The translations under genes were made by a program, and so were the position numbers. This document shows positions 41,490-62,036 of a stretch of DNA of 64,000 nt, piece after piece. The stretch lies in the IMG/VR virus record IMGVR_UViG_3300045970_000794, positions 248,001 to 312,000 of that record; one strand, 5' to 3'. The notes under the pieces are model-generated. The model worked only from the letters and a program-made list of their open reading frames with translations, did not search any database and had not been told where the DNA came from. Position 1 is the stretch's first letter. The number at the start of each line of letters is the position of its first letter.

Positions 41490-41560
41490 ATTAATATGTT
41501 ACAAAGGTAATAAAAATAAAGTTACCAAACAAATTATTCAGTAACTTTATTTAATATATT
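41490..41560 (-). promoter_or_regulatory. Module P1 (with inverted repeat)
   Basis: -7 box TACCTTTG 41509-41502. Confidence 0.7.
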
Positions 41561-41563
41561 AAT

Positions 41564-41908
41564 TTAAGCAATCATTGATTTTCGTTTAACTAATCTACTT
41601 TCAACCACATCGAATGCTTTAGTTTTATGAACGTCTTCGCTAACTTCATCGATAGAAAGGATAGCAATTAAAGATTTTTTAACTAGAGGACTTTCAACCA
41701 CATCAAATGCTTTAGTACTTTGTTTATCGGCACTACATTCATCGATAGAAAGGATAGCCACATCGATATTGGTGCTGGGATTAATCGAAGGCAAAGCGGT
41801 ATCGTAGCTGAATGATACGAAAGTATCATCATTAGATGTTTGTACTTGTGCATTAGCACAGAAAGTTAGAGTAAATAAGCAAATTGCGAACATGATTAAG
41901 TTTTTCAT
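41564..41908 (-). CDS. Secreted protein with two 31-aa internal repeats
   Basis: Signal peptide; AILSIDE..TKAFDVVES twice (93-bp period, 41597-41758). Confidence 0.65.
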   Translation of the reverse strand: MKNLIMFAICLFTLTFCANAQVQTSNDDTFVSFSYDTALPSINPSTNIDVAILSIDECSADKQSTKAFDVVESPLVKKSLIAILSIDEVSEDVHKTKAFDVVESRLVKRKSMIA

Positions 41909-41920
41909 AATTTTAAAATT

Positions 41921-41988
41921 TTAGGTTAATAATATAATACAAAGGTAAATAAAATAAATGAGAAAAACAAATATTATTTAATATATTT
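41921..41988 (-). promoter_or_regulatory. Module P2
   Basis: -7 box 41947-41940. Confidence 0.8.
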
Positions 41989-42312
41989 TGCTAAATAATT
42001 ACGATAATTTTGTCTATATTTTTTATAGTATTGTTTTTTAATAATATTAAGATTATAACCAATGGATTCCAATTCATTTTTTAAATCATTATATTCGGTT
42101 TCAGTAGCTAATTTGGATATTGAAACGCAATGCAAATACATTGCTTCAGAGTGTTGTCCGTTATGCATATATGATAATATATTACCACGACTTGATTCTA
42201 TTTCATAAGGGAATAAAGCAATAATATCACCTTCTTTAAATTTTCTGAAAATTACATCAGTTTTATTAATATCTTTTTTAAACGGGAATAAAGTAATATT
42301 ATCTTTTTTCAT
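41974..42312 (-). CDS. Hypothetical phage protein
   Basis: VIFRKF..IIALFP..SY.H.GQHS; follows P3. Confidence 0.7.
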   Translation of the reverse strand: MKKDNITLFPFKKDINKTDVIFRKFKEGDIIALFPYEIESSRGNILSYMHNGQHSEAMYLHCVSISKLATETEYNDLKNELESIGYNLNIIKKQYYKKYRQNYRNYLAKYIK

Positions 42313-42324
42313 GGTGTTTTGGTT

Positions 42325-42394
42325 TTAGTATTGATTAATATAATGCAAAGGTAATATAAATAATTGAGAAAAACAAATATTATTTAATATATTT
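42325..42394 (-). promoter_or_regulatory. Module P3
   Basis: -7 box 42353-42346. Confidence 0.85.
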
Positions 42395-42589
42395 TTAAAT
42401 ATAATATTTATCAGCTGTAAATTGTTTATCAAAAACGACCATACTATTTGATTTTGAAGGGTATTTATTAACTAAATTAATAGCTTCATCACGTGTTAAG
42501 CCTCTTCTTATTATTTCACGTCTTCTTGAAACTCTGAACACTTTATATACTTTATAAGTTCCAATGTATTTTTTTTCAATTGTTTTCAT
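42395..42589 (-). CDS. Hypothetical protein
   Basis: 64 aa; follows P4. Confidence 0.65.
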   Translation of the reverse strand: MKTIEKKYIGTYKVYKVFRVSRRREIIRRGLTRDEAINLVNKYPSKSNSMVVFDKQFTADKYYI

Positions 42590-42600
42590 AGTGGTTTGTT

Positions 42601-42670
42601 TTAGTATTGATTAATATAAGACAAAGGTAATATAAATAATTGACAAAAACAAATATTATTTAATATATTT
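42601..42670 (-). promoter_or_regulatory. Module P4
   Basis: -7 box 42629-42622. Confidence 0.85.
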
Positions 42671-42730
42671 TTATTTTTATTTTATATTGCTTGGTATCAT
42701 TGTATTATAGAGAAAAGATGAAAATAAATT

Positions 42731-42800
42731 GAAAATAATTGCATTTTTATTTGGTAGATTAAAATAATTGTTGTAGATTTGCAATATCAAATTAATCAAT
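42731..42800 (+). promoter_or_regulatory. Module P5 (class B upstream element)
   Basis: -7 box TAGATTTG 42774-42781. Confidence 0.75.
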
Positions 42801-42822
42801 TTAACCACTAAAACATATTATT

Positions 42823-43444: not shown

Positions 43445-43603
43445 GTTCTTATAAATTTAAGCTATTAATTAAATAGGTAATAATATAAATTAGGCTTCAT
43501 TAGATAAGCTATAAACGACTTTAATAATGTTTTAATATTTGGATATAGTTTGGATATTGGAGTGCCTTAAATCGCTTTAAAATGCTTAATGAAAATAATT
43601 ATA

Positions 43604-43669
43604 AAATATATTAAATAATATTTGGAATTATAGATTTTAATTTGTACCTTTGCATTATATTAACCAATA
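43604..43669 (+). promoter_or_regulatory. Module P6
   Basis: -7 box TACCTTTG 43645-43652. Confidence 0.85.
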
Positions 43670-43682
43670 AACCTTTTATATT

Positions 43683-43958
43683 ATGGAAACTACATTGAAT
43701 ATGAATGAACACAAATTTTATGTCTTAACTGATGATACTGGTAAAATAGTTGCTATCATTAGGACTGAAAGTATTCCACCATTTTGGAATAAGATTGAAC
43801 AAGCTATTAGAGAAGACCTTTGTTTAGAAAAGGATGTTAAAGTTAAATTAGTATCTAGTATTAGTCAGAATGAGAATACAACTATTTTCATTGATATTGA
43901 ATTTGGTGGTGGTATATGGGTTGGTAGTTATGAGTTAACGCAAACGGCGGTATATTAA
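43683..43958 (+). CDS. Hypothetical protein
   Basis: 91 aa with own promoter and terminator. Confidence 0.65.
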   Translation: METTLNMNEHKFYVLTDDTGKIVAIIRTESIPPFWNKIEQAIREDLCLEKDVKVKLVSSISQNENTTIFIDIEFGGGIWVGSYELTQTAVY

Positions 43959-44944: not shown

Positions 44945-44954
44945 AAGATTATTG

Positions 44955-45000
44955 GTTAAAGGTTAATGCAAAGATAAGGATAATATTTCTATTATCCAAA
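44955..45000 (-). promoter_or_regulatory. Module P7 with GAAA hairpin spacer
   Basis: TTTG-GATAATA GAAA TATTATCC-T-TATCTTTG. Confidence 0.75.
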
Positions 45001-45011
45001 TTTTTTTGCAT

Positions 45012-45404
45012 TTATTTTAATTGGTTATAAAAAATACCTTTTTCAGCATTTTCAAGGTCTTTACCAGTTGCTCCACGAAACCAAGCATCCCAATAAGTTC
45101 TTTGACAACTAGAATCCATTAAACGACCAATAATGATTTCTCTAATGTTTTCTTTATATGCTTGCATATCGCTTAATAAGTGGTCTGCAATGTCTTCATT
45201 TGATAACATAATATTTTTTACTGTAACATCTTTATTTAGTTTTAAAAATGTTTCCTCATACTTAGCTTTAGCTTCTTCTAATGTTTTAGCATCCACAATA
45301 CACCATTCTTCGGAGTTAAAAGAAGCTTCTTCAACTGTATTGTACTGTGTTAATGTTTCACACTTACAATCATCATCAATATCATATCCTAATATAAATT
45401 TCAT
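45012..45404 (-). CDS. Hypothetical protein
   Basis: ATG 45404 (MKFILG); the track start is a promoter TTG. Confidence 0.6.
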   Translation of the reverse strand: MKFILGYDIDDDCKCETLTQYNTVEEASFNSEEWCIVDAKTLEEAKAKYEETFLKLNKDVTVKNIMLSNEDIADHLLSDMQAYKENIREIIIGRLMDSSCQRTYWDAWFRGATGKDLENAEKGIFYNQLK

Positions 45405-45563: not shown

Positions 45564-46109
45564 TTATTTAAATAAATCAAAAATAATTTCTTCTTTACAA
45601 TAACTTGGTACTTCAATTTCCAGACTTATCACATCCCTAGCCCATGTACCAATTAATTCAACATTACCTTTTTTTGCTTCGTGGTTAATATGATAATCAC
45701 CGCCGCCACGTCCGTTGCCTTCGCAAGTCATTAAAGGAAGTGGGTGTATAATCCAACCGTCAACATCAACACATTTTCTTTTATCAATGAATTGATTTTT
45801 GCTGTGGTTAACCAAGTAAGGGAATATTTCTCTTTTGATAACTGTATCAACTGGATTAACTTTTGTTTTATCAGCACATCTACCATATACATTGGATTTA
45901 AGACCTTTGCATTCATCAGCATAATCACCAGCCCAAACAACCCTTTGTGGCTTCTGCATTATTAAACTTTCGAATGCACCAACAAATCTGTTTAACAACC
46001 AAGAATGTTCCATAAGGTTAAGACCATTGTCATAGTCATGAGAATATATCCATGCTTTGACTGTTCTTTTATTGTCGCCTAAAATGGCGGGGTTATAATA
46101 CTGTCCCAT
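45564..46109 (-). CDS. Hypothetical phage protein
   Basis: ATG 46109 (MGQYY); LMEHSW, HPLPLMT..GNGRGGGD. Confidence 0.7.
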   Translation of the reverse strand: MGQYYNPAILGDNKRTVKAWIYSHDYDNGLNLMEHSWLLNRFVGAFESLIMQKPQRVVWAGDYADECKGLKSNVYGRCADKTKVNPVDTVIKREIFPYLVNHSKNQFIDKRKCVDVDGWIIHPLPLMTCEGNGRGGGDYHINHEAKKGNVELIGTWARDVISLEIEVPSYCKEEIIFDLFK

Positions 46110-46119
46110 AATATAAAGT

Positions 46120-46171
46120 TTTAATTGGTTAATATGATACAAAGGTAAGTAAAATATTTTAATAAACCAAA
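46120..46171 (-). promoter_or_regulatory. Module P9
   Basis: -7 box 46147-46140. Confidence 0.75.
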
Positions 46172-46551
46172 CTTTTTAACACTTTTCTTTCAATTACTTC
46201 ACTTTTTGCAAAGAAACATTGTTTACCCGATAAACTTGGAACATAGTCACTAACAACATACTCAACTAATACGAATCCATGTTTTAAGATTTCTCTATTA
46301 TACCCTTTAAACCATTTACGCAATTTATTAATGGTATCACAAGTGGAATAATATTTACTAATCATACCACGATGTGAGACTGGTAAATCTTCATATAATA
46401 TTGGGTGCCCATCTGATTTCCAACTATGTTCACGACAAACCTTACGTTGAAAATCCAATACCTCCTCAACATTATTGAATGGTTTCTCATCTGCTCTATA
46501 AAAACCATCCTCATCGAATGGGCTTTCATAACGATATATAGTCATTTCCAT
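46159..46551 (-). CDS. Hypothetical protein
   Basis: 130 aa; carries the leader motif but no promoter. Confidence 0.65.
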   Translation of the reverse strand: MEMTIYRYESPFDEDGFYRADEKPFNNVEEVLDFQRKVCREHSWKSDGHPILYEDLPVSHRGMISKYYSTCDTINKLRKWFKGYNREILKHGFVLVEYVVSDYVPSLSGKQCFFAKSEVIERKVLKSLVY

Positions 46552-46584: not shown

Positions 46585-47175
46585 TTATTTGTTATAAAAC
46601 GTTGTGTATGCTTTATAGCTTTTTGAAATTGTATTATGATAATCGTCTTCATTTTTTAAACTTAAAGCAGTTATTAAAACATTCAGAATTTGAACGAGTG
46701 AATATAATTTTAAATTTTCTTGGTTATTACAATCAATATAATTGGTTTTATTATTATAATAATAACCGTATGCGCTTGTCCTTGTAAGTTTATTAAATAC
46801 TTCATAAAATCTAATTAACAATTCATTTTCATTATAAAGTTCTTTAAACTCTGTTGCTAACTTGTTTTTTATATCATTAGTCCAATTATCAACAATCAAT
46901 GAGTAAATAACGCCAAAAAAATAGTTTGGATGTTCCCTTAATCCCATATCCCAACATCTTTGTATAAAATCTGAATGTGTGAAACCTCCAAAAGTATTTT
47001 TATTTCCAATTGTCATTGTTGGAATGAGTAAAAACCCATAATTTCGTTTATCCCTTTTAATACGATTATTTTCATCTAATAAGAATTTTGCTTCATTAAC
47101 ATTTGCAAATAACACCCAAAAAGGATTTGGGCTAAATGATTTACATAATAATAAACCGCTTTCAATATTTTCCAT
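46585..47175 (-). CDS. Hypothetical protein
   Basis: 196 aa; follows P10. Confidence 0.6.
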   Translation of the reverse strand: MENIESGLLLCKSFSPNPFWVLFANVNEAKFLLDENNRIKRDKRNYGFLLIPTMTIGNKNTFGGFTHSDFIQRCWDMGLREHPNYFFGVIYSLIVDNWTNDIKNKLATEFKELYNENELLIRFYEVFNKLTRTSAYGYYYNNKTNYIDCNNQENLKLYSLVQILNVLITALSLKNEDDYHNTISKSYKAYTTFYNK

Positions 47176-47186
47176 GATTTTTGGTT

Positions 47187-47275
47187 TTAGTATTGATTAA
47201 TATAATGCAAAGGTAATAAAAAAAAGTTGCTATCCAAATTTTTTAGCAACTTTTTTCATATTATTTAATATATTT
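47187..47275 (-). promoter_or_regulatory. Module P10 (13-bp inverted repeat over the -33 box)
   Basis: -7 box 47215-47208; arms 47220-47232 and 47244-47256. Confidence 0.8.
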
Positions 47276-47792
47276 TACCAACTTGAACCATATTCACAAT
47301 AGCTAGAAATACCATTTATCTCATCAGCTTTCAATTCTCTAATGATAGGTGCTAACATTTTAACGGTATCTTTAAGGTCACCAAAATAGCTTTCATCATA
47401 TTGAGTACCACCAAAAAAGAAACCACTTTGACTTGGCAATAATCTTTCAGCTACCTTTGGGCTTTTTGATTTAACAACTCTTCTACAAAGTTCAATCAAT
47501 GTTTCTAATTGATTTAAACTAACTTCATAATCGCCACAATCGTCATTACCCTCTTGAACGTTCTGAACAAACCAAGCATGAATTTGATTAGATTTGCACC
47601 AGTAAGCAACGTTTTCAGTGATTTCAGTTACTCGTTTGAATTTGATGTTAATTTGATGTTAATTTTGACTTTCTTTTCACCTTCATTTTCGATGTAAACT
47701 TTTCTTGAAATGTCAATAACACCTTTAACCTTATTGTGTTCGTATTGAGCACCAATGTAGGTTTTTTTACTTAAATACATATCTAGTCCCAT
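47275..47792 (-). pseudogene. MGLDMYL-type phage gene frameshifted by an 11-bp tandem duplication
   Basis: TTTGATGTTAA x2 at 47641-47662; removing one copy gives a 168-aa ORF with YWCKSNQIHAWFV. Confidence 0.8.
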
Positions 47793-47803
47793 AATATAAA
47801 GTT

Positions 47804-47874
47804 TTAGTATTGATTAATATAATGCAAAGATACAAAATATAATTCAAATAAACAAATATTATTTAATATATTTT
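47804..47874 (-). promoter_or_regulatory. Module P11
   Basis: -7 box 47832-47825. Confidence 0.85.
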
Positions 47875-47886
47875 TAATTATTTTAC

Positions 47887-48082
47887 ATAAATAATGGGTT
47901 AGGTAACCACACCTAACCCAAATAATCAATTAATCAATATACTAAACACACTATGAAGACGTACTCAGTTTCTTTAAATAGTTAGTAGCTACCTCCGAAT
48001 TCAACCCTTAGTAAATCTATTAAGTACAAGTCAGTAGAAAGTTATGTACTTCGAGGGTAATTGCTATCTAACTATAATTTCT
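47887..48082 (-). ncRNA. Candidate structured small RNA (about 195 nt)
   Basis: Own promoter P12, no ATG, long bulged stem (48068-75 with 47978-85; 48050-66 with 47986-99), terminator 47895-47920. Confidence 0.55.
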
Positions 48083-48087
48083 TTTTG

Positions 48088-48119
48088 CAAAGATACAACA
48101 AATAATTTACTTTACCAAA
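48088..48119 (-). promoter_or_regulatory. Module P12 (core only)
   Basis: TTTG 48119-16, N20, TATCTTTG 48095-88. Confidence 0.7.
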
Positions 48120-48514
48120 TATAATTGCAACGATTTATTAATTTCTTTTAAATAAGCTTCTGCTTCTGTTTTATTATATAAAGCATATCTATCCATTTGC
48201 TTACCATTATAAGGTTTTAATGTAACAACATCAATTACTTTGCCATCTCTATTAACAAAATAATAATAAGTTGAGCAAGCTGGCATTCCACTTGCTAATG
48301 ATTTACCCCTAGATGGAATGTATTGATTTGATTTCAATTCAAACTGTGGCGGTATTGCTGCTAAATAAAATACTACTTTTGATACATCAGATTTACATAC
48401 TACAGTTCTGAATTTTCTACCTGTGATTTTAACATCCTCTTTAGTGAAATTACTCTTTTCATAAGTGATTCCTTTTCTTGTAAATTTCTCGGGTAATACT
48501 GTAAATGTTTTCAT
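48107..48514 (-). CDS. Hypothetical protein
   Basis: ATG 48514 (MKTFTV). Confidence 0.65.
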   Translation of the reverse strand: MKTFTVLPEKFTRKGITYEKSNFTKEDVKITGRKFRTVVCKSDVSKVVFYLAAIPPQFELKSNQYIPSRGKSLASGMPACSTYYYFVNRDGKVIDVVTLKPYNGKQMDRYALYNKTEAEAYLKEINKSLQLYLVK

Positions 48515-48523
48515 GGTATAAAG

Positions 48524-48594
48524 GTTTAATTGATTAATATAATGCAAAGATACAATAAATAATTTAATCTACCAAATATTATTTAATATATTTT
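48524..48594 (-). promoter_or_regulatory. Module P13
   Basis: -7 box 48552-48545. Confidence 0.85.
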
Positions 48595-48622
48595 TAATAT
48601 ATTTTTAATTATTTTTCAAAAT

Positions 48623-48690: not shown

Positions 48691-49062
48691 TCAATATTTT
48701 GAATCCTTAACAGCCTTTTGAATTAGCTTAATAGCTTCAATACACTGCTCGGGAGTAATAGCCTTATACTTTTTATTACATTTGATATGATTGTAAATTT
48801 TTTCAGCTTCACAACCACTTGGTAAATTGGTATTCCAATCCTTTTCTTTTGCAAATCCAACTCCAATTCGTGTGAATTTTGGAAAGCCAACAATAGCTTG
48901 GTCTTTATGTAACTTCACTCTGAAAACCCAATAGTTTTCATCGATTGGTGGGGTTATCATTATAACTCCACGGTTGCCATTACTGAAAATTGAACTCACA
49001 TCACCTTTGAAATATTCATTGAATTCAACTACTAACTTAGGTACTTCTGTTTTTGTTTCCAT
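48691..49062 (-). CDS. Hypothetical phage protein
   Basis: 123 aa; TPPIDENYW..GFPKF..DWNTNLP. Confidence 0.7.
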   Translation of the reverse strand: METKTEVPKLVVEFNEYFKGDVSSIFSNGNRGVIMITPPIDENYWVFRVKLHKDQAIVGFPKFTRIGVGFAKEKDWNTNLPSGCEAEKIYNHIKCNKKYKAITPEQCIEAIKLIQKAVKDSKY

Positions 49063-49073
49063 GATAAATAGTT

Positions 49074-49142
49074 TTTATTGATTAATATAATGCAAAGATA
49101 AGTAAAATATTTTAACCCACCAAATAAAAATGCAATTATTTT
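49074..49142 (-). promoter_or_regulatory. Module P14 (class B)
   Basis: -7 box 49100-49093. Confidence 0.85.
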
Positions 49143-49480
49143 TACATTGTTGAAATTATTTCCTCAAGTATAGCAATCCTTTTTTTAGTATAGAATATAT
49201 TATGTGGGAACCAATTAAGGTTTTTATCCCTTTTACGTTTCGGACAATATTTGTCTAACTCTATATAAACGTTTTCATCCTCATAAAAGCTAAAAACTTT
49301 AGATTTAGCATCCCATGTATCTATATTCAATATTTCACAAGCACGACTAATAGCAAGACATATACCATTATAGTAAATAGGGTACCCTTTTTGAATTTTA
49401 TTATCTTCAACACGTTCTTTAATAAACTTTAACGCCTCTTGATAAATCTTTTTCCTTAATTTAGTTGTATTTCTTGGCAT
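49142..49480 (-). CDS. Hypothetical protein, paralog of 60826-61185
   Basis: LRK.IY..L....G.C..I..IEL..Y.P..WFP..KRI.ILE. Confidence 0.65.
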   Translation of the reverse strand: MPRNTTKLRKKIYQEALKFIKERVEDNKIQKGYPIYYNGICLAISRACEILNIDTWDAKSKVFSFYEDENVYIELDKYCPKRKRDKNLNWFPHNIFYTKKRIAILEEIISTM

Positions 49481-49492
49481 GATATAAAAGGT

Positions 49493-49579
49493 TTATTGAT
49501 TAATACTTTGCAAAGATAATAAAAAGATAGTTACTAACCTAATTTTTTAGTAACTATTTTTCATATTATTTAATATATT
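49493..49579 (-). promoter_or_regulatory. Module P15 (11-bp inverted repeat)
   Basis: -7 box 49518-49511; arms 49527-37 and 49547-57. Confidence 0.8.
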
Positions 49580-49886
49580 ACCAAACACTTCCAAATAAGT
49601 TTTTGTTAATATCAACTTTAGTCTTACACCAGTCAATTATTGTTTCAGCATAATAACTTGTTGTTAAGTCACTAAGGAACATATACAATTCTCTATATGT
49701 ATTACCAGTACCAACTGTTACAACCCTACGTGTAAACTCTTCAGCTTTACTTTGGTCACTGGAACTCCTTGTACCTTTTGAATAGTCCCATTCTTTTCCA
49801 ATAACAGTAATTGCTTTTTTTGTTGTTTCTACAGTGATAATGCCACCTTTAGCATATTCACCAATTTTCCAAGTCTTTGTTGCCAT
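49578..49886 (-). CDS. Hypothetical protein
   Basis: ATG 49886 (MATKTWK). Confidence 0.65.
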   Translation of the reverse strand: MATKTWKIGEYAKGGIITVETTKKAITVIGKEWDYSKGTRSSSDQSKAEEFTRRVVTVGTGNTYRELYMFLSDLTTSYYAETIIDWCKTKVDINKNLFGSVW

Positions 49887-49895
49887 AATATAATA

Positions 49896-49966
49896 GTTTA
49901 ATTGATTAATATGATGCAAAGATAAAACAAATAAATGAGAAAACCTAATATTATTTAATATATTTT
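49896..49966 (-). promoter_or_regulatory. Module P16
   Basis: -7 box 49924-49917. Confidence 0.85.
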
Positions 49967-49980
49967 TATGCGCACACATG

Positions 49981-52519: not shown

Positions 52520-52531
52520 AGTGTAAAAAAG

Positions 52532-52765: not shown

Positions 52766-52918
52766 TTCTGTCATTATAAGACATGTTGGTACCACCACAG
52801 TACCAAGAGGTATACTCCAACCTACACCATATTTTTTTTACCATATATTTAGATATATACATAACCTACATACGTATCAATAACAAAAAGGGAATGAGTA
52901 TTACACCCACCCCCTTAA
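52766..52918 (+). ncRNA. Candidate small RNA, copy A
   Basis: TGTCATTA..AGAC.TG and AGGTATACTCCAAC shared with 54922-54976; TTGGTAC-N7-GTACCAA hairpin. Confidence 0.4.
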
Positions 52919-52940: not shown

Positions 52941-53921
52941 CTATCTTAATACATAATCATTTTGACCTGTAACTTCTAATGCAAAATTAAATGATTGCAT
53001 ATTAGTTCTATAATTAGTACCAACACTTAAACTTTCAAGTTGACCATTCTCACGTTTTGGGTGTGATTTAGCATGATTAGTCCAACTAGTTACCCCATTG
53101 TGTAATCCAAAAATTGTATTACCTTTTTGGTTCATTTCTTTTTTAATGTGGGAATATAATGTGTCCATTGCATTTAAAGTTTTACCACTATCAACACCAA
53201 CCTTAGCAGTCAATCTATCAACACCTAATAATTCTCTTACTAAACCATCAACTAAATTTTGTGTACAGGCTGTTGAGTGGAATTTATTATAAATCTCAAT
53301 TTGTTTCATACTTTCGTTTAATGCTAAACGAATTAAACTTGGTAACTCAACCATTTTACCCTCTAACGACGCACTATGTTTTAACTTCATTTCACCCCTT
53401 TTATAAAAACGAAAAAATTGATTTGAACAGCTCATTACCATATCTGAAATTCCTACACCTAATCCAGTGCTACCATCATTAGAATCAATAATGGTAATGT
53501 ACTTTTTAATGCTATCATTACCAACTTTTGAAAATCCATCAATAGCTAACTGAATAAACGTTTTACGCCCACCATTCAAACAACCAGCTTTGCTTACATT
53601 TAACTCACCAAAACCATTCATACCACGTAACACCAATTCAACAACATCATCATTTTGGCTCACATGATAACTAGCTTTGGTAGTGTTAATGATTTCCATA
53701 CTTTGAGTATTTAATAACCCAAAATATGTGGTGCGAATTGATTTCTGTTTTTTAGCTTTACCAAATAAGCCAACCATTGGAACTTTCTCAATACGAAAAT
53801 TTAAACCATTGTCAACCAAGATTTTTTTCACTTGATTTTTAAGTGCTCTTTCTTGCTTTTTAGCATTATTAGTTTTTTGTGCCATAGCTTCTTTTTCAAA
53901 ATTTACGATTTCTGTTTTCAT
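52941..53921 (-). CDS. DUF932-family protein
   Basis: AGCLNGGRKTFIQL, DSNDGS..G..MVMSCSNQF, KHSAS; ATG 53921. Confidence 0.75.
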   Translation of the reverse strand: MKTEIVNFEKEAMAQKTNNAKKQERALKNQVKKILVDNGLNFRIEKVPMVGLFGKAKKQKSIRTTYFGLLNTQSMEIINTTKASYHVSQNDDVVELVLRGMNGFGELNVSKAGCLNGGRKTFIQLAIDGFSKVGNDSIKKYITIIDSNDGSTGLGVGISDMVMSCSNQFFRFYKRGEMKLKHSASLEGKMVELPSLIRLALNESMKQIEIYNKFHSTACTQNLVDGLVRELLGVDRLTAKVGVDSGKTLNAMDTLYSHIKKEMNQKGNTIFGLHNGVTSWTNHAKSHPKRENGQLESLSVGTNYRTNMQSFNFALEVTGQNDYVLR

Positions 53922-53930
53922 GATATATAG

Positions 53931-54000
53931 TTTTAATTGATTAATATAATGCAAAGGTAAGTAAAATATTTTAATCTACCAAATATTATTTAATATATTT
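53931..54000 (-). promoter_or_regulatory. Module P21
   Basis: -7 box 53959-53952. Confidence 0.85.
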
Positions 54001-54013
54001 TCAAATTATTTTA

Positions 54014-54676
54014 CTAATGTTGTACGAAACACACGTTATTCTTAGTTATACAGTAAGTACACTCCAAACCACATTTAATGTTTTTACTACTTGTAACAGG
54101 GCAAATAAATGATTTATGATTTGCTTTTAACTCATTGCAATACTCAATACTACCAAAATTCAATTTACCATTGATGAAACTACTTATTAAATTGAAATTG
54201 CTATTAGTCTTAATAACACTAAAATCTAATAAACTTTCTACCTTGGTATATACATAAAATTTAATATGTGGAAATAAACCAATAATATCATTCCAAAAAT
54301 CAATATATGATTGACTGAAAAAGTCACCACTAGAATGAATCCTTACCACAGTCCTTTTTGTTTCACTTAATTGTGTTACAATTAATTCCTTTAATAAACT
54401 TGGATTGTTTAAAAACAATTCATGATTAACAGTACGATACAATTCAGTATCTACATATTGAACCTCAGCCTTTTTTGCATAGCAACTTGCTTTGCAGTCC
54501 ACACAATTTAAACAAGTTTTTACACTTGGTAAATCAAAGATAAGAATATTATGTAACTTGCTATTACCATTAACTAATCTATTCTTATTAATATAGATGT
54601 AATTAAATAGTAATTCACGAGTATTGGTTTGTTTGCTGTAATCTCTGAATGTCCTAGATAAATCAAAATTGTTCAT
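54014..54676 (-). CDS. GP88-like (phage Gene 88) Cys-cluster protein
   Basis: FDLPSVKTC..C..C..CYAKK, VRIHSSGDF, FYVYTK, C..C..C; ATG 54676. Confidence 0.6.
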   Translation of the reverse strand: MNNFDLSRTFRDYSKQTNTRELLFNYIYINKNRLVNGNSKLHNILIFDLPSVKTCLNCVDCKASCYAKKAEVQYVDTELYRTVNHELFLNNPSLLKELIVTQLSETKRTVVRIHSSGDFFSQSYIDFWNDIIGLFPHIKFYVYTKVESLLDFSVIKTNSNFNLISSFINGKLNFGSIEYCNELKANHKSFICPVTSSKNIKCGLECTYCITKNNVCFVQH

Positions 54677-54689
54677 AGTGTTTCGGTTT

Positions 54690-54759
54690 AAGTGATTAAT
54701 AACATATTGCAAAACTACAAAAAATATTTCATATAAACAAATATTATTTAATATATTTT
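54690..54759 (-). promoter_or_regulatory. Module P22
   Basis: -7 box TAGTTTTG 54717-54710. Confidence 0.75.
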
Positions 54760-54870
54760 TCATATACTATATAAGATATTAATTGTTGGCTCAAACCCTC
54801 TGAAACCCCTATGGCAACTCAAAAACATTCTTATTCCGTGAATAAGAATGATAGCAAATTAAAATATTTT

Positions 54871-54921
54871 GAAAATAATTCACTTTTTATTTGGTAGATT
54901 AAATTATTTTCACTACCTTTG
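54871..54921 (+). promoter_or_regulatory. Module P23 (class B)
   Basis: -7 box TACCTTTG 54914-54921. Confidence 0.8.
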
Positions 54922-55020
54922 TATTGTCATTAAGACGTGACGATACCCACAACGGTCTCGGAAGGTATACTCCAACATGCAATGTTGTCGGTGGAACACT
55001 CCAATATGCCCGCTATTTTC
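54922..55020 (+). ncRNA. Candidate small RNA, copy B (3' end uncertain)
   Basis: Shares motifs with copy A; CAACAT-GCA-ATGTTG hairpin. Confidence 0.4.
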
Positions 55021-55278
55021 CTATGGGGAAATATTTGGAATTGTAAATTATTATTTGTAAGTTTGCATATGATTTAAATGGGACTGCGGTCCCACTGAAT
55101 TTGCTCGCTCATTAAATAAATGGGTTAGCCTTGCCATTCCTATTACTGAATATATCAGCGATACGGATTCCTATACCCATTTTTTTGCGAATTTGGGCAT
55201 CGGCATAGCTATTTCCAAAAATTTCTGGCGAAAAATATTAACAAAAATTTTTGCACAAGTCCGATTCCTATTAGAATA

Positions 55279-56387: not shown

Positions 56388-56536
56388 TATAATAATTCTT
56401 CATTTTTATGTACATTCAATCTAAGAAAATCATTACAAACTCTTTCACCTTCATCGTTATAATAAAGTAAATGAATATAGTCATCAGTTTTAAGTGCTTT
56501 CAAGTCACTCATTTTTAAAACTTCACCTTTTCTCAT
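56387..56536 (-). CDS. 49-aa hypothetical protein (not in ORF track)
   Basis: MRKGEVLKMSDLK..; directly behind P24. Confidence 0.45.
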   Translation of the reverse strand: MRKGEVLKMSDLKALKTDDYIHLLYYNDEGERVCNDFLRLNVHKNEELL

Positions 56537-56560
56537 AAGATTATGTATTTGATTAGAGCA

Positions 56561-56592
56561 CAAATTTACAACAAATAATTTAAATAACCAAA
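56561..56592 (-). promoter_or_regulatory. Module P24 (core only)
   Basis: TTTG-N20-TAAATTTG. Confidence 0.6.
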
Positions 56593-56595
56593 TTT

Positions 56596-56964
56596 TTATT
56601 CAACTATTTTAATTTGCCCTCTCATTTCATTGAGTTTATCGTAATGTTCTATCATAATTTTACAGCTATGCGTATGATTGAGCTCACAATTATAATGTAT
56701 GTCATCCCAATGGTCTTTTTTATTAATTGTGCATGTGGTACATGGGTTATTTTTCTCATGCCATTCTTGTATTGGTTTATGTGCAATAGCCCACTTTTCA
56801 TTATAAGCATCACGTTTATCCCATGAATCGGTTAATGATACTCTGGTTTCATCATTACCAACATTCGTGATATCAATCTTAATGTATTTGAGCATTTGTT
56901 CTAGAAAATTCAAATTATTTTCTTTTTCGATTACTTCTATGATTTTATCTTTATAACTTCCCAT
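56596..56964 (-). CDS. Hypothetical protein with Cys/His cluster
   Basis: CTTC..HYNC..H.HSC. Confidence 0.6.
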   Translation of the reverse strand: MGSYKDKIIEVIEKENNLNFLEQMLKYIKIDITNVGNDETRVSLTDSWDKRDAYNEKWAIAHKPIQEWHEKNNPCTTCTINKKDHWDDIHYNCELNHTHSCKIMIEHYDKLNEMRGQIKIVE

Positions 56965-58997: not shown

Positions 58998-59214
58998 CGC
59001 TATTTTTTTTAAAAGATAATTTACCAATCTTTTTAACTGGTGTACATACATCACACCTAGTATATTGTGTTTGTTCTAGGTCACCAGTATTATTAGGCTC
59101 ATGATTACCTTTACGTCCAATACCAATTGAGTAATTCTCACTTATTTTAATGAAAATATTTCCATTTGGTGACTCCCAAACATCATAAATGTCTAAATCT
59201 TTTTCTAGTTTCAT
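58987..59214 (-). CDS. Hypothetical protein
   Basis: 75 aa; follows P25. Confidence 0.6.
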   Translation of the reverse strand: MKLEKDLDIYDVWESPNGNIFIKISENYSIGIGRKGNHEPNNTGDLEQTQYTRCDVCTPVKKIGKLSFKKNSDGK

Positions 59215-59235
59215 GGCTATAGTATTAATTTTTTA

Positions 59236-59267
59236 CAAAGATATATAAAATAAATTAAAAAACCTAA
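59236..59267 (-). promoter_or_regulatory. Module P25 (core only, weak -33)
   Basis: TATCTTTG 59243-59236. Confidence 0.5.
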
Positions 59268-59272
59268 TAAAA

Positions 59273-59455
59273 TTATTTTTTTCTTGTGAAAAAATGTTGT
59301 ATTATTTGTAATGGGAATACCCAAGGGCCAATAAGTGCTAACCACCCATCATTTTTAGATGGTGGTGATTTAGTTTTGCTAGATAATCTATAATAATAGA
59401 TAAAATAGATAGAAACAATTAAACCTATTAGGTAATAAGAAATTAAGTAAATCAT
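59273..59455 (-). CDS. Small membrane protein
   Basis: Two hydrophobic segments. Confidence 0.55.
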   Translation of the reverse strand: MIYLISYYLIGLIVSIYFIYYYRLSSKTKSPPSKNDGWLALIGPWVFPLQIIQHFFTRKK

Positions 59456-59696: not shown

Positions 59697-60150
59697 GTTC
59701 TTTTAGTCTTTTTTTATGTTTTAACATTCGTCTATATAATTCTTCAACAATATCGAATGATACCTGAGTACATCCAATAATAAACTTATCAATACCAAGG
59801 TTTACAATATGTTCACCAATTTTAATTGGAAGGTCTGGTACTTCATAACCTTCTGGCATATCTGATAATTCTAGATTTTTTACAGAATAACTTACGTTTG
59901 CAAGGTCATCAGTAGTTTTAACATCAGCATAATCAACTGGGTATGCACTGAAAAAGCCAAGTCTTCTTAACTCATCATGAGCTGATTCAATAGCATTTTG
60001 GCAAAGGTATATTTTTTTATGTTCAACATCATTGAAGATTAAACCATCTATCATCTTTGACCGATACATAGCAGTAAAATAGGTACCACTGGGTACTTTA
60101 TCCCAATGTATCACATGAACAGTTTCTTCTGTTAAATATTTTTTATCCAT
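59677..60150 (-). CDS. Hypothetical protein, tandem paralog A
   Basis: Aligns over its length with 60155-60598; ATG 60150. Confidence 0.65.
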   Translation of the reverse strand: MDKKYLTEETVHVIHWDKVPSGTYFTAMYRSKMIDGLIFNDVEHKKIYLCQNAIESAHDELRRLGFFSAYPVDYADVKTTDDLANVSYSVKNLELSDMPEGYEVPDLPIKIGEHIVNLGIDKFIIGCTQVSFDIVEELYRRMLKHKKRLKEREEIKL

Positions 60151-60154
60151 GGGA

Positions 60155-60598
60155 TTAATCTTTTTTATCAATTAAGTTATCAGCGATTTTACGTACCAAA
60201 TCATTGTCAATAGTTGTACAACCAACTTTGATGTGACCTTCCTTTATTTCAAGTTTATAGTCACCAATTCTTATTGGTAAGTCTGGTGTAACAAAACCTT
60301 CTTGTACATCAAGAATTTCAATATTTCTCATACTACCATAACCACCAAATTCCAATTCAGCAACAGTTCTTATAGTGTTATAATTTAAAGTGAATCCAAA
60401 TTTATACCCTAAATTGTTTGGTGCATCTGAACCTTGAGCAAAATCTTGGCATAAAATTATCTTTTTATCATCTACATTATTAAATATAAGACCAGATATT
60501 GGGTTTTCGTTATAAATCGCTCTAAATTCAGTACCAGTTGGTACATTTTCCCATCTGATATATTCAGTAACTTGTTTTCTAATACAATTTTCATTCAT
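60155..60598 (-). CDS. Hypothetical protein, tandem paralog B
   Basis: I.W..VP.GT.F.A.Y....I.GLIFN.V..KKI.LCQ; PDLPI.IG; GCT. Confidence 0.65.
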   Translation of the reverse strand: MNENCIRKQVTEYIRWENVPTGTEFRAIYNENPISGLIFNNVDDKKIILCQDFAQGSDAPNNLGYKFGFTLNYNTIRTVAELEFGGYGSMRNIEILDVQEGFVTPDLPIRIGDYKLEIKEGHIKVGCTTIDNDLVRKIADNLIDKKD

Positions 60599-60610
60599 AA
60601 TATTATAGTT

Positions 60611-60823
60611 TTAAAGGTTAACGTATTTGTTAATAAATTTCATGTTGCACGTTATATTGGCTAATGCAAAACAAACTGGAATTGATATTAACATAAGGAA
60701 CATCCAGTTTGGATTCTCAGTAATTAACATAAGGATTGCTGGTGCAACTCCAATGATAAATGGTGTTAAAATACAAAATAATATCCAATAAAAAGAAACC
60801 ACTCCTAATAAAAATTTTTTCAT
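60611..60823 (-). CDS. Small membrane protein
   Basis: Two TM segments. Confidence 0.6.
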   Translation of the reverse strand: MKKFLLGVVSFYWILFCILTPFIIGVAPAILMLITENPNWMFLMLISIPVCFALANITCNMKFINKYVNL

Positions 60824-60825
60824 AA

Positions 60826-61185
60826 TTATTTTTTAAAGGTTAATAATATTACTTCAAGTATATGAATTCTTTTTAGAATATCTTCACTAGTATATGATGG
60901 AAACCAGAAGCATGAGCTATTGAAGTGTGGGTCATAGTAATTAACATATGGTTTATAAGCCATTAGTTCAATGAGCCAGCAATCGTTACTCTCTAGGTCA
61001 AATCTATTCTCATTAGCATCCCGCCAATTTACTATTGGTCTGGCACCGTATAGAATACCATTACAAAATCCTTCACCAAATACATCATTCTCTTTAAGTT
61101 TCACTATAAGATATTTGAGCATTGCTTTATAGATTCGTTTCCTTAAAGCTGGAGTATTTTTAGTGCTTTTAGTTAGTCGTATCAT
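60826..61185 (-). CDS. Hypothetical protein, paralog of 49142-49480
   Basis: ATG 61185 (MIRL). Confidence 0.6.
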   Translation of the reverse strand: MIRLTKSTKNTPALRKRIYKAMLKYLIVKLKENDVFGEGFCNGILYGARPIVNWRDANENRFDLESNDCWLIELMAYKPYVNYYDPHFNSSCFWFPSYTSEDILKRIHILEVILLTFKK

Positions 61186-61371
61186 TGCAAACGGCTTTAT
61201 CTTTAAGTTGAAAATCCATTTCATTAATGATGGTTTTCAATATTTTAATTCTTTTTGTCATACCACGCTTATTATCATTGAACCAGTATCCAAAATAACC
61301 ACCATAATTATTTTTTGGCTTATATTTAAGAAGCCCAGTAAAAATAATACTCTTGATAAAAAATTTTTCAT
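61169..61371 (-). pseudogene. Frameshifted or truncated third member of the 49142/60826 family
   Basis: ATG AAA AAT TTT TTA, then -1 frame GLLKYKPK..YWF..TKRIKILKTII. Confidence 0.45.
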
Positions 61372-61373
61372 AA

Positions 61374-61610
61374 TTATTTAGTTTTATTACGTTTAGCACA
61401 GAATTTACAATTACCTTTGTGAGCGGCCCAGTCATTGTTTTGACCATAAATAGAGCCAACATACTCACAGCCATCAATGACATATGTATTGATAGGAGTA
61501 TAGTTAACAGAATAGCCACTAGGCTTTGTAGCCACATTATCCTCTTGCCGTTTTGGTAAACAAGATGTGATTAAGATTGATATAAGAATCAATGGAATGT
61601 ATCTTTTCAT
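61374..61610 (-). CDS. Putative lipoprotein
   Basis: MKRYIPLILISILITSC lipobox; HKGNCKFC. Confidence 0.6.
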   Translation of the reverse strand: MKRYIPLILISILITSCLPKRQEDNVATKPSGYSVNYTPINTYVIDGCEYVGSIYGQNNDWAAHKGNCKFCAKRNKTK

Positions 61611-61611
61611 A

Positions 61612-61956
61612 TTAGTTTACGATTTGTGATTTCTTTGCTACGATGATACTATCATTTTCTGATATGATGGATTCAATATTAATAACCTTACCAGTGTTTT
61701 GGTTATTGATGATAATAGTTGATTGGTGGCTTTTACCAACGCTATAGGTTGTTGAGTTAACAGCTCCATTAAGTACAGCAACTTTAACATAACTACCGCT
61801 ACCAGTTGACATATCATAAATTTTAAGACCTTTTAATTCTTGAGAAAGCTTTTCTTCAGCACCATTTAATGTATTTCTAGTGGTACCAGCATCTTCACAA
61901 GAAGAGAAAGCGATTGCTAATAATAATACACCTAAAACTAATGTAATTTTTTTCAT
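61612..61956 (-). CDS. Putative lipoprotein
   Basis: ATG 61956, MKKITLVLGVLLLAIAFSSC lipobox. Confidence 0.7.
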   Translation of the reverse strand: MKKITLVLGVLLLAIAFSSCEDAGTTRNTLNGAEEKLSQELKGLKIYDMSTGSGSYVKVAVLNGAVNSTTYSVGKSHQSTIIINNQNTGKVINIESIISENDSIIVAKKSQIVN

Positions 61957-61969
61957 AGGATATAAGATT

Positions 61970-62036
61970 TTAAGTATTAATTTGATGCAAAGATAAATAA
62001 AATATTTTAATCTACCAAATAAAAATGCAATTATTT
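61970..62036 (-). promoter_or_regulatory. Module P26 (class B)
   Basis: -7 box 61995-61988. Confidence 0.8.

What the first reader, a model, noticed from the sequence alone, without database searches (positions are those of the whole stretch)
41490..62036. Array of single-gene cassettes, each headed by the same promoter-plus-leader module of about 70 bp (26 copies)
Seen: most genes from 41.5 to 54.9 kb carry their own copy of [AAATATATTAAATAATA or AAATAATTGCATTTTTA]-TTTG-N20-TAnnTTTG-CATTATATTAATCAAT, about one per 0.8 kb over the whole span. Conservation extends well beyond the two boxes. The passengers are small unknown proteins, ncRNA candidates, paralogs and pseudogenes. Established: TTTG/TAnnTTTG is the Bacteroidota housekeeping promoter, and T4-type phages have repeated early-promoter elements (PeSL) bounding exchangeable modules. 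Inference: a host-takeover region where the repeats both sequester host RNAP and serve as recombination joints, making an integron-like gene-shuffling array with two upstream-element classes.
Basis: partly seen in the sequence, partly recalled or inferred. Interest (0 to 1): 0.85.

Follow-up and report, generated by a model that had tools for sequence, protein, structure and literature searches.

The report
Repeated promoter-leader cassettes in Bacteroidota phage
A variable region of a 362-kb T4-like phage of a Bacteroidota host holds 27 copies of one host-type promoter-plus-leader unit, most heading a single small gene or small RNA; it is the Bacteroidota counterpart of the known T4 "PeSL" regulatory cassettes, and similar arrays turn up in dozens of other phage contigs.

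Summary
A profile finds 27 module copies in 41487-62042, 24 of them in 41.5-55.1 kb. Each has an A/T-rich upstream element, TTTG, a 19-20 nt spacer, TAnnTTTG, then a leader that puts the ATG 30-33 nt after the -7 box. Chance gives about 0.2 copies of the upstream element or of the leader.

The modules are host-RNAP (Bacteroidota sigma-A type) promoters with SD-less leaders, packed into a hyperplastic region of ORFans. Much of the conservation beyond the two boxes is generic. The upstream element and the leader motif TAAYCAATWAAAAC also precede bacterial genes (rpsP, infC, obg) and genes of other phages.

The copies are also mosaics that share exact tracts of up to 40 bp, and leaders are homogenised within each genome.

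No close relative of this phage exists in the collections, so shuffling cannot be shown for this array itself. At least 70 related loci carry similar arrays. In close sister pairs, cassettes are replaced or deleted with junctions inside modules, including one clean hybrid module. Backbone gene order varies between lineages.

Verdict: a Bacteroidota variant of T4-type PeSL cassettes. The promoter function is very likely. The recombination-joint role is plausible but indirect. RNAP sequestration and integron mechanics are unsupported.

The parts
41487..41556 (-). Module 1, hairpin class: an upstream-A remnant, then a stem-loop spanning the -33 element, then the -7 box. It heads only a 27-aa ORF or a non-coding stretch.
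   Evidence: hairpin -15.2 kcal/mol at -51..-13
41902..41992 (-). Module 2, class A. It heads a 114-aa ORF (41564-41908) with a signal-peptide-like N-terminus.
42307..42398 (-). Module 3, class A. It heads a 112-aa ORF (41974-42312). Its leader is 25/25 identical to that of module 10.
42583..42676 (-). Module 4, class A. It heads a 64-aa ORF (42395-42589). Modules 2-4 share one spacer variant, but their genes are unrelated.
42724..42812 (+). Module 5, class B (TTGCAT subtype). It heads a 190-aa ORF (42823-43395). It shares a 35-bp exact inverted match with module 27.
43600..43690 (+). Module 6, class A. It heads a 91-aa ORF (43683-43958).
44948..45024 (-). Module 7, with a hairpin inside the -33/-7 spacer. 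It heads a 69-aa ORF (44735-44944).
   Evidence: the same hairpin-spacer type is seen at window 31981 and in L046
45399..45485 (-). Module 8, class A, preceded by a strong terminator-like stem-loop. It heads a 130-aa ORF (45012-45404).
   Evidence: -20.9 kcal/mol at -98..-67
46104..46198 (-). Module 9, with a different upstream sequence. It heads a 181-aa ORF (45564-46109, PHROG 3156), which has homologs in 95 fetched loci.
47169..47264 (-). Module 10, hairpin class (upstream-A element, hairpin with T-run, -7 box). It heads a 196-aa ORF (46585-47175) followed by a 130-aa ORF (46159-46551, Phage_T4_Y00F).
47786..47879 (-). Module 11, class A, preceded by terminator hairpin 47895-47920. It heads a frameshifted gene (47792-47628 in one frame, continuing to 47275 in another).
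48058..48142 (-). Module 12. It heads a non-coding transcript candidate of about 190 nt (48082 to 47885) that ends in a terminator hairpin.
   Evidence: MFE z -2.5
48507..48601 (-). Module 13, class A with a partly duplicated upstream element, preceded by a terminator-like stem-loop. It heads a 135-aa ORF (48107-48514).
49055..49152 (-). Module 14, class B. It heads a 123-aa ORF (48691-49062).
49475..49568 (-). Module 15, hairpin class. It heads a 112-aa ORF (49142-49480).
49879..49970 (-). Module 16, class A (-33 reads TTAG). It heads a 102-aa ORF (49578-49886), which has homologs in 68 fetched loci.
51201..51292 (-). Module 17, class A. It heads a 155-aa ORF (50738-51205) and two further small ORFs.
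52101..52191 (-). Module 18, class A-like. It heads a 201-aa ORF (51502-52107) and a 65-aa ORF.
52513..52605 (-). Module 19, class A. It heads a 119-aa ORF (52160-52519).
52706..52840 (+). Module 20, class B (TTCAC subtype), together with the small structured RNA it heads (52766-52840).
53914..54008 (-). Module 21, class A. It heads a 326-aa DUF932 protein (52941-53921).
54672..54767 (-). Module 22, class A, preceded by stem-loop 54826-54850. It heads a 220-aa GP88-family protein (54014-54676).
54862..54996 (+). Module 23, class B (TTCAC subtype), together with the second copy of the small structured RNA (54922-54996).
55022..55200 (+). Module 24 (core promoter only), together with a structured non-coding candidate (55071-55200).
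   Evidence: MFE z -3.0
56534..56617 (-). Module 25, a diverged copy. It heads a 49-aa ORF and a polycistronic run of genes.
59212..59280 (-). Module 26, a diverged partial copy. It heads a 75-aa ORF (58987-59214).
61951..62042 (-). Module 27, class B. It heads a 114-aa ORF (61612-61956) with a lipoprotein-like signal.

Best explanation
The region is a hyperplastic, probably early-expressed region of a T4-like jumbo phage that infects a Bacteroidota (Flavobacteriia-like) host.

**What each unit is**
- Each unit is an extended promoter for the host RNA polymerase. It has an A/T-rich UP-type element, the -33 TTTG, an AT-rich -18 motif and the -7 TAnnTTTG.
- The promoter is joined to a 26-29 nt leader without a Shine-Dalgarno sequence. 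The leader carries the phylum-wide motif TAAYCAATWAAAAC and places the ATG 30-33 nt after the -7 box.
- Almost every small gene or small RNA is therefore its own ready-to-express transcription unit. About a third of the units also carry a terminator-like stem-loop that insulates them from upstream transcription.

**How the repeats may act in recombination**
- The units share 20-40 bp exact tracts in direct orientation. They can therefore also serve as substrates for short-homology recombination.
- That recombination would homogenise the modules within a genome. It would also delete, insert, replace and invert cassettes, as described for PeSL elements of T4-like coliphages and vibriophages.

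**Basis of each claim**
- Shown: the anatomy, the statistics, the generic nature of the signals, the mosaicism, and module-located junctions in sister arrays.
- Inferred: early timing, use of host RNAP, and recombination in this particular phage.
For: **Anatomy and statistics:**

**T4-like phage:**

**Agreement with the host promoter model** (-7 box at -12 to -5, TSS 4-5 nt after the G, AT-rich -18/-28 motifs, mean leader 33 nt): PMC6847099.

**Generic upstream element:** 30 metagenome contigs carry it, and some precede what look, from the N-terminal sequence alone, like bacterial UvdE-type genes; this was not tested.

**Generic leader motif:**
- 35 genome contigs carry promoter plus leader motif, about 27 of them Bacteroidota, including contigs of 48-58% GC where chance expectation is far below 1.
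- The motif lies upstream of rpsP, infC, obg and a TetR gene.
- It also lies upstream of orthologs in other phage lineages.

**Passengers are ORFans:**

**Widespread architecture:** 70 of 178 fetched loci have at least 8 such promoters, at up to 2.7 per kb.

**Mosaic modules:**
- Distances between sub-elements are uncorrelated (Mantel r 0.10 and -0.08).
- 81 of 351 module pairs share at least 20 bp exactly, up to 40 bp.
- Every repeated 25-mer of the window lies in the array.

**Genome-specific leaders:** the own-genome PWM ranks 3.65 on average out of 23, against 12 expected.

**Sister arrays:**
- 58% of 208 homology breakpoints lie in modules, against 20% for random positions.
- There is a clean hybrid module at a 480-bp cassette indel between L159 and L160.
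- There is a 2.6-kb indel with its junction in spacer-like homology between L082 and L150.

**Variable order and one inverted block relative to relatives:**

**Stem-loops at about 10 of 27 modules:**
Against: - No close relative of this phage was found. The best passenger identity is 65%, and the other assemblies are identical. No indel can therefore be tied to a module of this array.
- Breakpoints in sister arrays are no more frequent in modules than at random intergenic positions (58% against 56%). Alignment extension through conserved modules would by itself place breakpoints at module edges.
- Conservation of the upstream element, the -18 motif and the leader can be explained by selection for expression alone.
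- Transcription start sites, timing and use of host RNAP are not measured.
- Only about a third of modules have the stem-loop that defines PeSLs.
Confidence: 0.6

Rival explanations
1. The modules are promoters and leaders only. The similarity between copies comes entirely from selection for strong host-type transcription and SD-less translation. The repeats play no part in genome rearrangement.
For: - The upstream element, the -18 motif and the leader motif are generic in Bacteroidota and in other phages (PMC6847099).
- Breakpoints are not enriched over the intergenic null.
- No rearrangement can be shown in this phage.
Against: - Exact tracts of 25-40 bp include spacer sequence, which function does not fix.
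- Three adjacent modules share one spacer variant before unrelated genes.
- Sub-elements assort independently.
- Leaders are genome-specific.
- There is a clean hybrid module at a cassette indel in a sister pair.
Confidence: 0.3
2. The two upstream classes are operators for different regulators or different temporal classes. This would parallel early PeSL against middle-mode PmSL in vibriophage nt-1. Class B (AAATAATT-GCAT/CAC-TTTTTA) would be bound by a phage or host factor.
For: - Class B is sharply defined: 5 copies against 0 expected.
- Class-B-like elements recur in other lineages (L144, L168, L172, L064).
- The TTCAC subtype precedes the same small-RNA family in the window and in L064.
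- PmSLs are a precedent (PMC4122927).
Against: - Both classes share an AAAATAAT-type A/T tract at the same place, and may be variants of one UP-type element.
- No candidate regulator was identified, and there are no expression data.
Confidence: 0.25
3. The module is a small mobile element of its own (MITE-like, or a homing-associated element) that spreads by transposition.
For: - There are many dispersed copies confined to one region.
- An endonuclease-VII-like gene lies in the array (44100-44738) and has a paralog at 4761-5363.
Against: - Copies always sit in the same register, immediately before a start codon and in the gene's orientation.
- No terminal inverted repeats or target duplications were seen around them, and no transposase was found.
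- Sub-elements are mosaic rather than copied whole.
Confidence: 0.05
4. The array acts mainly as a decoy that titrates host RNA polymerase away from host genes.
For: The only support is the high density of strong-looking promoters: 24 in 13.6 kb.
Against: - Each promoter heads an intact ORF or a structured RNA at a fixed distance, so expression of the passengers explains the promoters.
- No test was possible.
Confidence: 0.05

Closest known systems
PeSL (promoter-early stem-loop) regulatory cassettes of T4-like myoviruses (Arbiol et al. 2010, PMC2839356; Comeau et al. 2014, PMC4122927)
   Same: - A repeated composite motif with an AT-rich upstream part, a host-consensus promoter and the start of the downstream gene.
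- The motifs are concentrated in a hyperplastic region of a T4-like phage and flank single ORFans.
- Copies are similar enough for homologous recombination.
- In sister arrays, cassette indels and replacements have junctions in the motifs and leave hybrid copies.
- A second upstream class recalls the PmSLs of nt-1.
   Different: - The promoter is the Bacteroidota -33/-7 type, not the sigma-70 -35/-10 type.
- There is no Shine-Dalgarno sequence. Instead there is a conserved leader with a phylum-wide motif and a fixed 30-33 nt distance to the ATG.
- The defining stem-loop is present in only about 10 of 27 copies, and in three of them it lies inside the promoter.
- Some units head small RNAs.
- Mini-circles and indels have not been shown for this phage.
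Housekeeping promoters of Bacteroidota (TTTG / TAnnTTTG; refined for Flavobacterium johnsoniae in PMC6847099)
   Same: - The same -33 and -7 elements and spacing.
- An AT-rich motif near -18.
- A leader of about 30 nt without a Shine-Dalgarno sequence.
- The same leader motif is found before rpsP, infC and obg of Bacteroidota genomes.
   Different: - Here there are 27 near-identical copies in 20 kb, with 20-40 bp exact tracts.
- The -33 element and the upstream element are far more uniform than reported for host promoters.
Integrons
   Same: An array of single-gene cassettes of mostly unknown function. The PeSL authors draw the same analogy.
   Different: - There is no integrase, attI or attC.
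- Every cassette has its own promoter, rather than one common Pc promoter.
- Exchange would be by homologous recombination between promoter repeats.

Membership tests
PeSL regulatory cassettes (T4-like phages) | A repeated motif containing a host-consensus promoter with an AT-rich region upstream | tested here: met
   There are 27 copies. The core promoter, the upstream element and the leader all lie far above chance. The promoter type is Bacteroidota -33/-7 rather than sigma-70.
PeSL regulatory cassettes (T4-like phages) | A stable stem-loop (terminator or attenuator) just upstream of the promoter in each element | tested here: inconclusive
   Strong stem-loops occur at or in about 10 of 27 modules: 41502, 44969, 45435, 47208, 47825, 48545, 49511, 49917, 54921 and 52552. 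The other modules abut or overlap the preceding stop codon and have no hairpin.
PeSL regulatory cassettes (T4-like phages) | The 3' end carries the ribosome-binding site and start codon of the downstream gene | tested here: met
   The ATG lies 30-33 nt after the -7 box in most copies. There is no Shine-Dalgarno sequence, as expected for Bacteroidota; a conserved leader motif takes its place.
PeSL regulatory cassettes (T4-like phages) | Preferential location in hyperplastic regions, next to ORFans, in a T4-like genome | tested here: met
   - T4-type portal and terminase.
- Passengers are almost all without Pfam or PHROG function.
- Only 12 of the passenger and flanking ORFs searched have a homolog in about 145 related loci.
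- All exact copies in the 362-kb contig lie in this region.
PeSL regulatory cassettes (T4-like phages) | Indels and replacements between close relatives are bounded by the motifs, leaving chimeric copies | tested here: inconclusive
   - This is not testable for this phage, because no close relative exists.
- It is seen in sister arrays: L159/L160, L082/L150, L046/L087.
- Breakpoints are not enriched over the intergenic null.
PeSL regulatory cassettes (T4-like phages) | Mini-circles formed by recombination between flanking motifs; early timing; promoter and terminator activity | not testable with these tools
   This needs inverse PCR or reads, RNA time courses and reporter assays.
Bacteroidota sigma-A promoter | TTTG at -33 and TAnnTTTG at -7 with a spacer of about 19-21 nt, and no G at the two middle positions of the -7 box | tested here: met
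   The middle positions are CC, TC, AA and similar, with G in only a few copies (TAGATTTG, TAGTTTTG, TAAGTTTG).
Bacteroidota sigma-A promoter | Transcription starts 4-5 nt after the -7 box | not testable with these tools
   No transcript data are available. The small RNA family aligns from right after the -7 box in 13 of its 15 members, which fits this feature.
Integron | IntI integrase, attI, attC sites, promoterless cassettes behind one Pc promoter | tested here: not met
   No integrase domain occurs among the array proteins. The repeats are promoters, one per cassette.

The most novel reading that the evidence does not exclude
Large phages of Bacteroidota share a phylum-specific cassette-exchange system. 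Expression-ready units (a host-type extended promoter, the TAAYCAATWAAAAC leader, and one gene or small RNA) would be the common currency. They would be moved, replaced and inverted by short-homology recombination between the promoter repeats, within and between co-infecting phages. In that reading, the array in this window is one snapshot of a pool that also carries a conserved, previously undescribed small RNA.
Probability: 0.35. Interest if true: 0.7.

Novelty: new variant of a known kind. Interest (0 to 1): 0.55.

Why it matters
- It extends the PeSL idea from phages of Proteobacteria to phages of a phylum with a different sigma factor and no Shine-Dalgarno translation. In that idea, regulatory repeats double as joints for gene shuffling.
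- The architecture is common: 70 fetched loci carry it.
- It gives a ready handle for finding early or accessory genes, which are anti-defence candidates, in uncultured Bacteroidota phages.
- It gives natural, compact promoter-leader parts for expression in Flavobacteriia.
- It also yields two testable by-products: a phylum-wide 5'-leader motif and a new small RNA family.

Tried and rejected
- **Known-phage DNA search.** Megablast of the array and of the first 25 kb against the phage collection gave no relative.
- **Rfam.** There was no hit at gathering score, and only one chance-level hit at E<=1.
- **Single-protein searches.** Locus search and exact-protein look-up with the DUF932 passenger returned only the source contig and identical copies in sibling samples, so no population variants were seen.
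- **Leader pattern in four contigs of about 271 kb.** These turned out to be chance hits with no promoter context.
- **ATTCCTAT motif in the 55-kb non-coding stretch.** It is not enriched in the window.
- **All-pairs BLAST script.** One run timed out and was redone from a single database search.
- **Close pairs without Bacteroidota promoters.** L154/L156, L165/L197, L083/L085, L194/L195 and L128/L132 were left out of the breakpoint test.
- **Literature.** Searches found no description of such arrays in Bacteroidota phages.
- **Not tried:** walking the rest of the 362-kb contig. It would cost too many look-ups.

Full report
**Origin of the window**

The window is bases 248001-312000 of a 362,102-bp metagenomic contig (JGI 3300045970 Ga0485187_0000003, also IMGVR_UViG_3300045970_000794). 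It encodes a T4-type portal protein and a T4-type large terminase. The nearest portals in the phage collection are only 36-38% identical: Microcystis phage Mel-JY01 and Flavobacterium phage vB_FspM_immuto. GC content is about 29%. No DNA relative exists in the phage collection. It is therefore a distant T4-like jumbo phage without a sequenced close relative.

- The core pattern TTTG-N18-22-TAnnTTTG occurs 31 times against 4.9 expected.
- The class-A upstream element plus -33 occurs 14 times against 0.20 expected.
- The -7 end plus leader occurs 12 times against 0.17 expected.
- The class-B upstream element occurs 5 times against 0 expected.
- The repeat finder reports families of 20 copies of 77 nt and 15 copies of 100 nt.
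- A profile built from the copies finds 27 hits with E<1e-5 from 41487 to 62042. Of these, 24 lie in 41.5-55.1 kb. Only three lie in 55.1-62.0 kb, where genes are arranged in operons.
- Every exact copy of the upstream 21-mer, and every match to the 20-mer leader pattern, in the whole 362-kb contig lies in this window.
- Identical sequence in three other assemblies excludes an assembly artefact.

**Anatomy of the module**

Read on the strand of the downstream gene, each unit has these parts:

- an A/T-rich upstream element of about 17-19 nt;
- the -33 element TTTG, often extended to TTTGGTAG;
- a 19-20 nt spacer with a conserved AATTATTT-type stretch near -18;
- the -7 element TAnnTTTG;
- a leader, typically CATTATATTAATCAAT followed by (T/A)AAAC, then about 8-10 nt and the ATG.

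The ATG lies 30-33 nt after the -7 box in most protein-heading copies.

By the promoter model established for Flavobacterium johnsoniae, the -7 box spans -12 to -5 and the start site lies 4-5 nt after the G. That model also reports AT-rich motifs at -18 and -28 and a mean leader of 33 nt (PMC6847099). Applied here, it gives transcripts with a 26-29 nt leader that lacks a Shine-Dalgarno sequence.

Three upstream classes exist:

- **Class A** (AAATATATTAAATAATA): 14 copies.
- **Class B** (AAATAATT-GCAT or -CAC-TTTTTA): 5 copies.
- **Hairpin class** (41502, 47208, 49511): a terminator-like stem-loop with a T-run lies between a displaced class-A element and the -7 box. In 44969 a hairpin fills the spacer.

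Further strong stem-loops lie just upstream of modules 45435, 47825, 48545, 49917 and 54921. Most other modules abut or overlap the stop codon of the preceding gene, so the region is packed as gene-module-gene-module.

**Passengers**

- Of about 20 array proteins scanned, only DUF932 (52941-53921) and GP88 (54014-54676) match Pfam. A precomputed hit assigns 46159-46551 to Phage_T4_Y00F.
- PHROGs adds only families of unknown function, plus a weak endonuclease-VII match for 44100-44738.
- The gene after module 47825 is broken by a frameshift. Residues 1-54 are in one frame and the rest, up to a conserved SSW end, are in another. Intact homologs of 189-191 aa occur in L089 and L150.
- Four modules head non-coding stretches. 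Two of these belong to a structured small-RNA family, described under by-products below.
- Paralogs are few.

**How much of the conservation is generic**

A metagenome scan for the class-A element joined to the core promoter did not return the source contig. It returned 30 other low-GC contigs. Some carry what look, from the N-terminal sequence alone, like bacterial UvdE-type genes; this was not tested. Others are phage-like arrays.

A scan of one genome per prokaryotic species for promoter plus TAAYCAATWAAAAC returned 35 contigs. About 27 are from Bacteroidota of several orders, including contigs of 48-58% GC. A simple composition estimate puts the chance expectation there far below one hit. 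The motif lies before rpsP, infC, obg and a TetR-family gene. The same motif lies before orthologs of the 102-aa passenger in many other phage lineages.

The AAAATAAT-type tract of both upstream classes recurs at the same position in other phages. The upstream element, the -18 motif and the leader are therefore general expression signals of the phylum, not inventions of this phage.

**The architecture is widespread**

Homologs of two passengers (alignments A1 and A2) brought in 148 loci from IMG/VR. Seventy of the 178 loci examined carry at least eight Bacteroidota-type promoters, at up to 2.7 per kb; L172 has 55 in 20.6 kb. Each lineage has its own upstream and leader consensus. The window's density (1.8 per kb) and information content (8.1 and 7.2 bits) are mid-range among them.

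**Evidence bearing on recombination**

*Within the window*

- Modules are mosaics. Distances between copies in the upstream element, spacer and leader are essentially uncorrelated (Mantel r 0.10, -0.08 and 0.27).
- Module 47208 has a leader 25/25 identical to that of 42346 but a quite different upstream half.
- Modules 53952 and 61988 share a 95% identical spacer but belong to different upstream classes.
- Three adjacent modules (41940, 42346, 42622) share one spacer variant before unrelated genes.
- Eighty-one of 351 module pairs share at least 20 bp exactly, up to 40 bp, and 66 of those pairs are in direct orientation. Every repeated 25-mer of the 64-kb window lies in the array.

*Across lineages*

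- The leader before an orthologous gene fits the leader consensus of its own genome. The mean rank is 3.65 of 23 against 12 expected, and nine rank first. This shows homogenisation or lineage-specific selection.
- A backbone order (DUF932, then the 102-aa gene, then the 181-aa gene) recurs in many lineages, but with different numbers of cassettes between the anchors. The window has about seven cassettes where several relatives have none.
- The order is reversed in some lineages.
- The 190-aa gene (42823-43395) lies on the opposite strand in the window compared with five lineages.
- Homologs in the roughly 145 related loci were found for only 12 of the passenger and flanking ORFs searched.

*In close sister pairs (82-98% identical)*

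- Fifty-two non-redundant replacement or indel events give 208 homology breakpoints. Of these, 58% lie within a module against 20% for random positions, with peaks at the upstream/-33 junction and at the ATG.
- One event is clean. L160 has two modules flanking a 480-bp cassette. L159 has a single module whose upstream flank matches the upstream copy and whose -7 side and gene match the downstream copy (35/40).
- Another event, a 2.6-kb indel between L082 and L150, has its junction in a TTTGTAGATTAAAAATAAA stretch that resembles the module spacer.

*Limits of this evidence*

- Breakpoints are no more frequent in modules than at random intergenic positions (56%). In these arrays, intergenic DNA is essentially module DNA.
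- Alignments tend to run through conserved modules and stop at their edges, which would produce the same pattern.
- No close relative of the window phage exists, so nothing can be shown for this array itself.

**Comparison with known systems**

PeSLs of T4-like phages are composite repeats. They have an AT-rich part, a stem-loop terminator, a host-consensus early promoter, a Shine-Dalgarno sequence and a start codon. They are concentrated in hyperplastic regions next to ORFans and mediate indels, replacements and mini-circles. Their authors themselves compare them with integrons (PMC2839356; PMC4122927).

The present array matches in position, composition, passengers and, by proxy, junction behaviour. 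It differs in four ways:

- the promoter type is Bacteroidota -33/-7;
- a phylum-specific leader replaces the Shine-Dalgarno sequence;
- the stem-loop is present in only about a third of copies;
- some units head small RNAs.

Literature searches found no description of such arrays in Bacteroidota phages. I therefore file it as a new variant of a known kind. Integron membership fails: there is no integrase or attC, and each cassette has its own promoter. Nothing bears on RNAP sequestration.

**By-products**

1. **A small RNA family of about 65 nt.** It starts right after class-B (TTCAC subtype) modules at 52766 and 54922. A covariance model finds 15 members with E<=1e-3 in eight phage lineages. 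All six pairs of its hairpin show compensatory changes, and no shuffle of 500 reaches the observed covariation score. The loop TCACAA and a following GTAKACTCCRAC are conserved. There is no Rfam match. In 13 of the 15 members a promoter lies directly upstream.
2. **The leader motif TAAYCAATWAAAAC**, as a phylum-wide 5'-UTR element.

**Verdict**

- The units are very probably host-RNAP promoters with leaders that make each small gene an independent, probably early, transcription unit.
- Their role as recombination joints is plausible. It is supported by mosaicism, homogenisation and junctions in sister arrays, but it is unproven here.
- The finding is a Bacteroidota version of PeSL cassettes and an example of a widespread, apparently undescribed architecture.

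Noticed in passing
window 52766-52840 (+) and 54922-54996 (+); also L046 2137-2211, L087 (4 copies), L147, L067, L064, L172, L073, L168: A conserved small structured RNA of about 65 nt. Its hairpin has compensatory changes in 6 of 6 pairs, a conserved TCACAA loop and an invariant GTAKACTCCRAC, followed by a short stem and a T-run. There is no Rfam match, and in 13 of the 15 members a promoter lies directly upstream.
   Followed up: yes
window leaders, e.g. 53922-53951 (-); bacterial loci L207-L241: The leader motif TAAYCAATWAAAAC follows Bacteroidota promoters in bacterial genomes of several orders, including high-GC ones. It lies before rpsP, infC, obg and a TetR gene. This suggests a phylum-wide 5'-UTR element of unknown role.
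   Followed up: partly
window 47275-47792 (-): This gene is split by a frameshift. The first 54 aa are in one frame and the rest in another. Intact homologs of 189-191 aa exist in L089 and L150. It is either a pseudogene or a programmed frameshift.
   Followed up: yes
window 44100-44738 (+) and 4761-5363 (+): Two related genes: both match the same L046 ORF at 49% and 53% identity. The first has a K/E-rich tandem-repeat N-terminus and a weak endonuclease-VII PHROG match. It lies without its own module, on the opposite strand, inside the array. It may be a homing-type endonuclease that could stimulate local recombination.
   Followed up: partly
window 47885-48082 (-): A non-coding transcript candidate of about 190 nt behind module 48088. 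Its MFE z-score is -2.5, and it ends in a strong terminator hairpin at 47895-47920.
   Followed up: partly
window 54920-55650: A stretch of about 700 bp without credible ORFs and with higher GC. It holds two plus-strand promoters, a structured candidate RNA at 55071-55200 (z -3.0) and three ATTCCTAT repeats. The repeat is not enriched window-wide.
   Followed up: partly
window 42724-42812 (+) versus 61951-62042 (-); genes 42823-43395: These two class-B modules share a 35-bp exact inverted match. The 190-aa gene lies on the opposite strand relative to the 102-aa and 181-aa genes, whereas in five other lineages all three share a strand. This suggests an inversion.
   Followed up: partly
window 14085-16607 (+), 32066-35530 (+), 62645-63562 (-): Host-like genes in the phage: a full-length ClpB-type chaperone, an OmpA-domain/substrate-binding protein with an ABC permease, and a cation-efflux protein.
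   Followed up: no
L048/L050 (contig ERZ1673699.5 NODE_5, 381,678 bp): Another jumbo contig with its own repeated module. It has a different upstream consensus of the TTCTTTAACACAAAA type, and AGGAG-like sequences before the ATG.
   Followed up: no
L159 about 3250-3280 and L160 about 2780-2812: Promoters whose -7 box lies only 4 nt before the ATG. These would give leaderless or nearly leaderless transcripts in a sister array.
   Followed up: no
window 59677-60171 / 60155-60598 (-); 49142-49480 / 60826-61224 (-): These are the only paralog pairs among the passengers (33% and 30% identity). The first pair is adjacent and overlapping.
   Followed up: no
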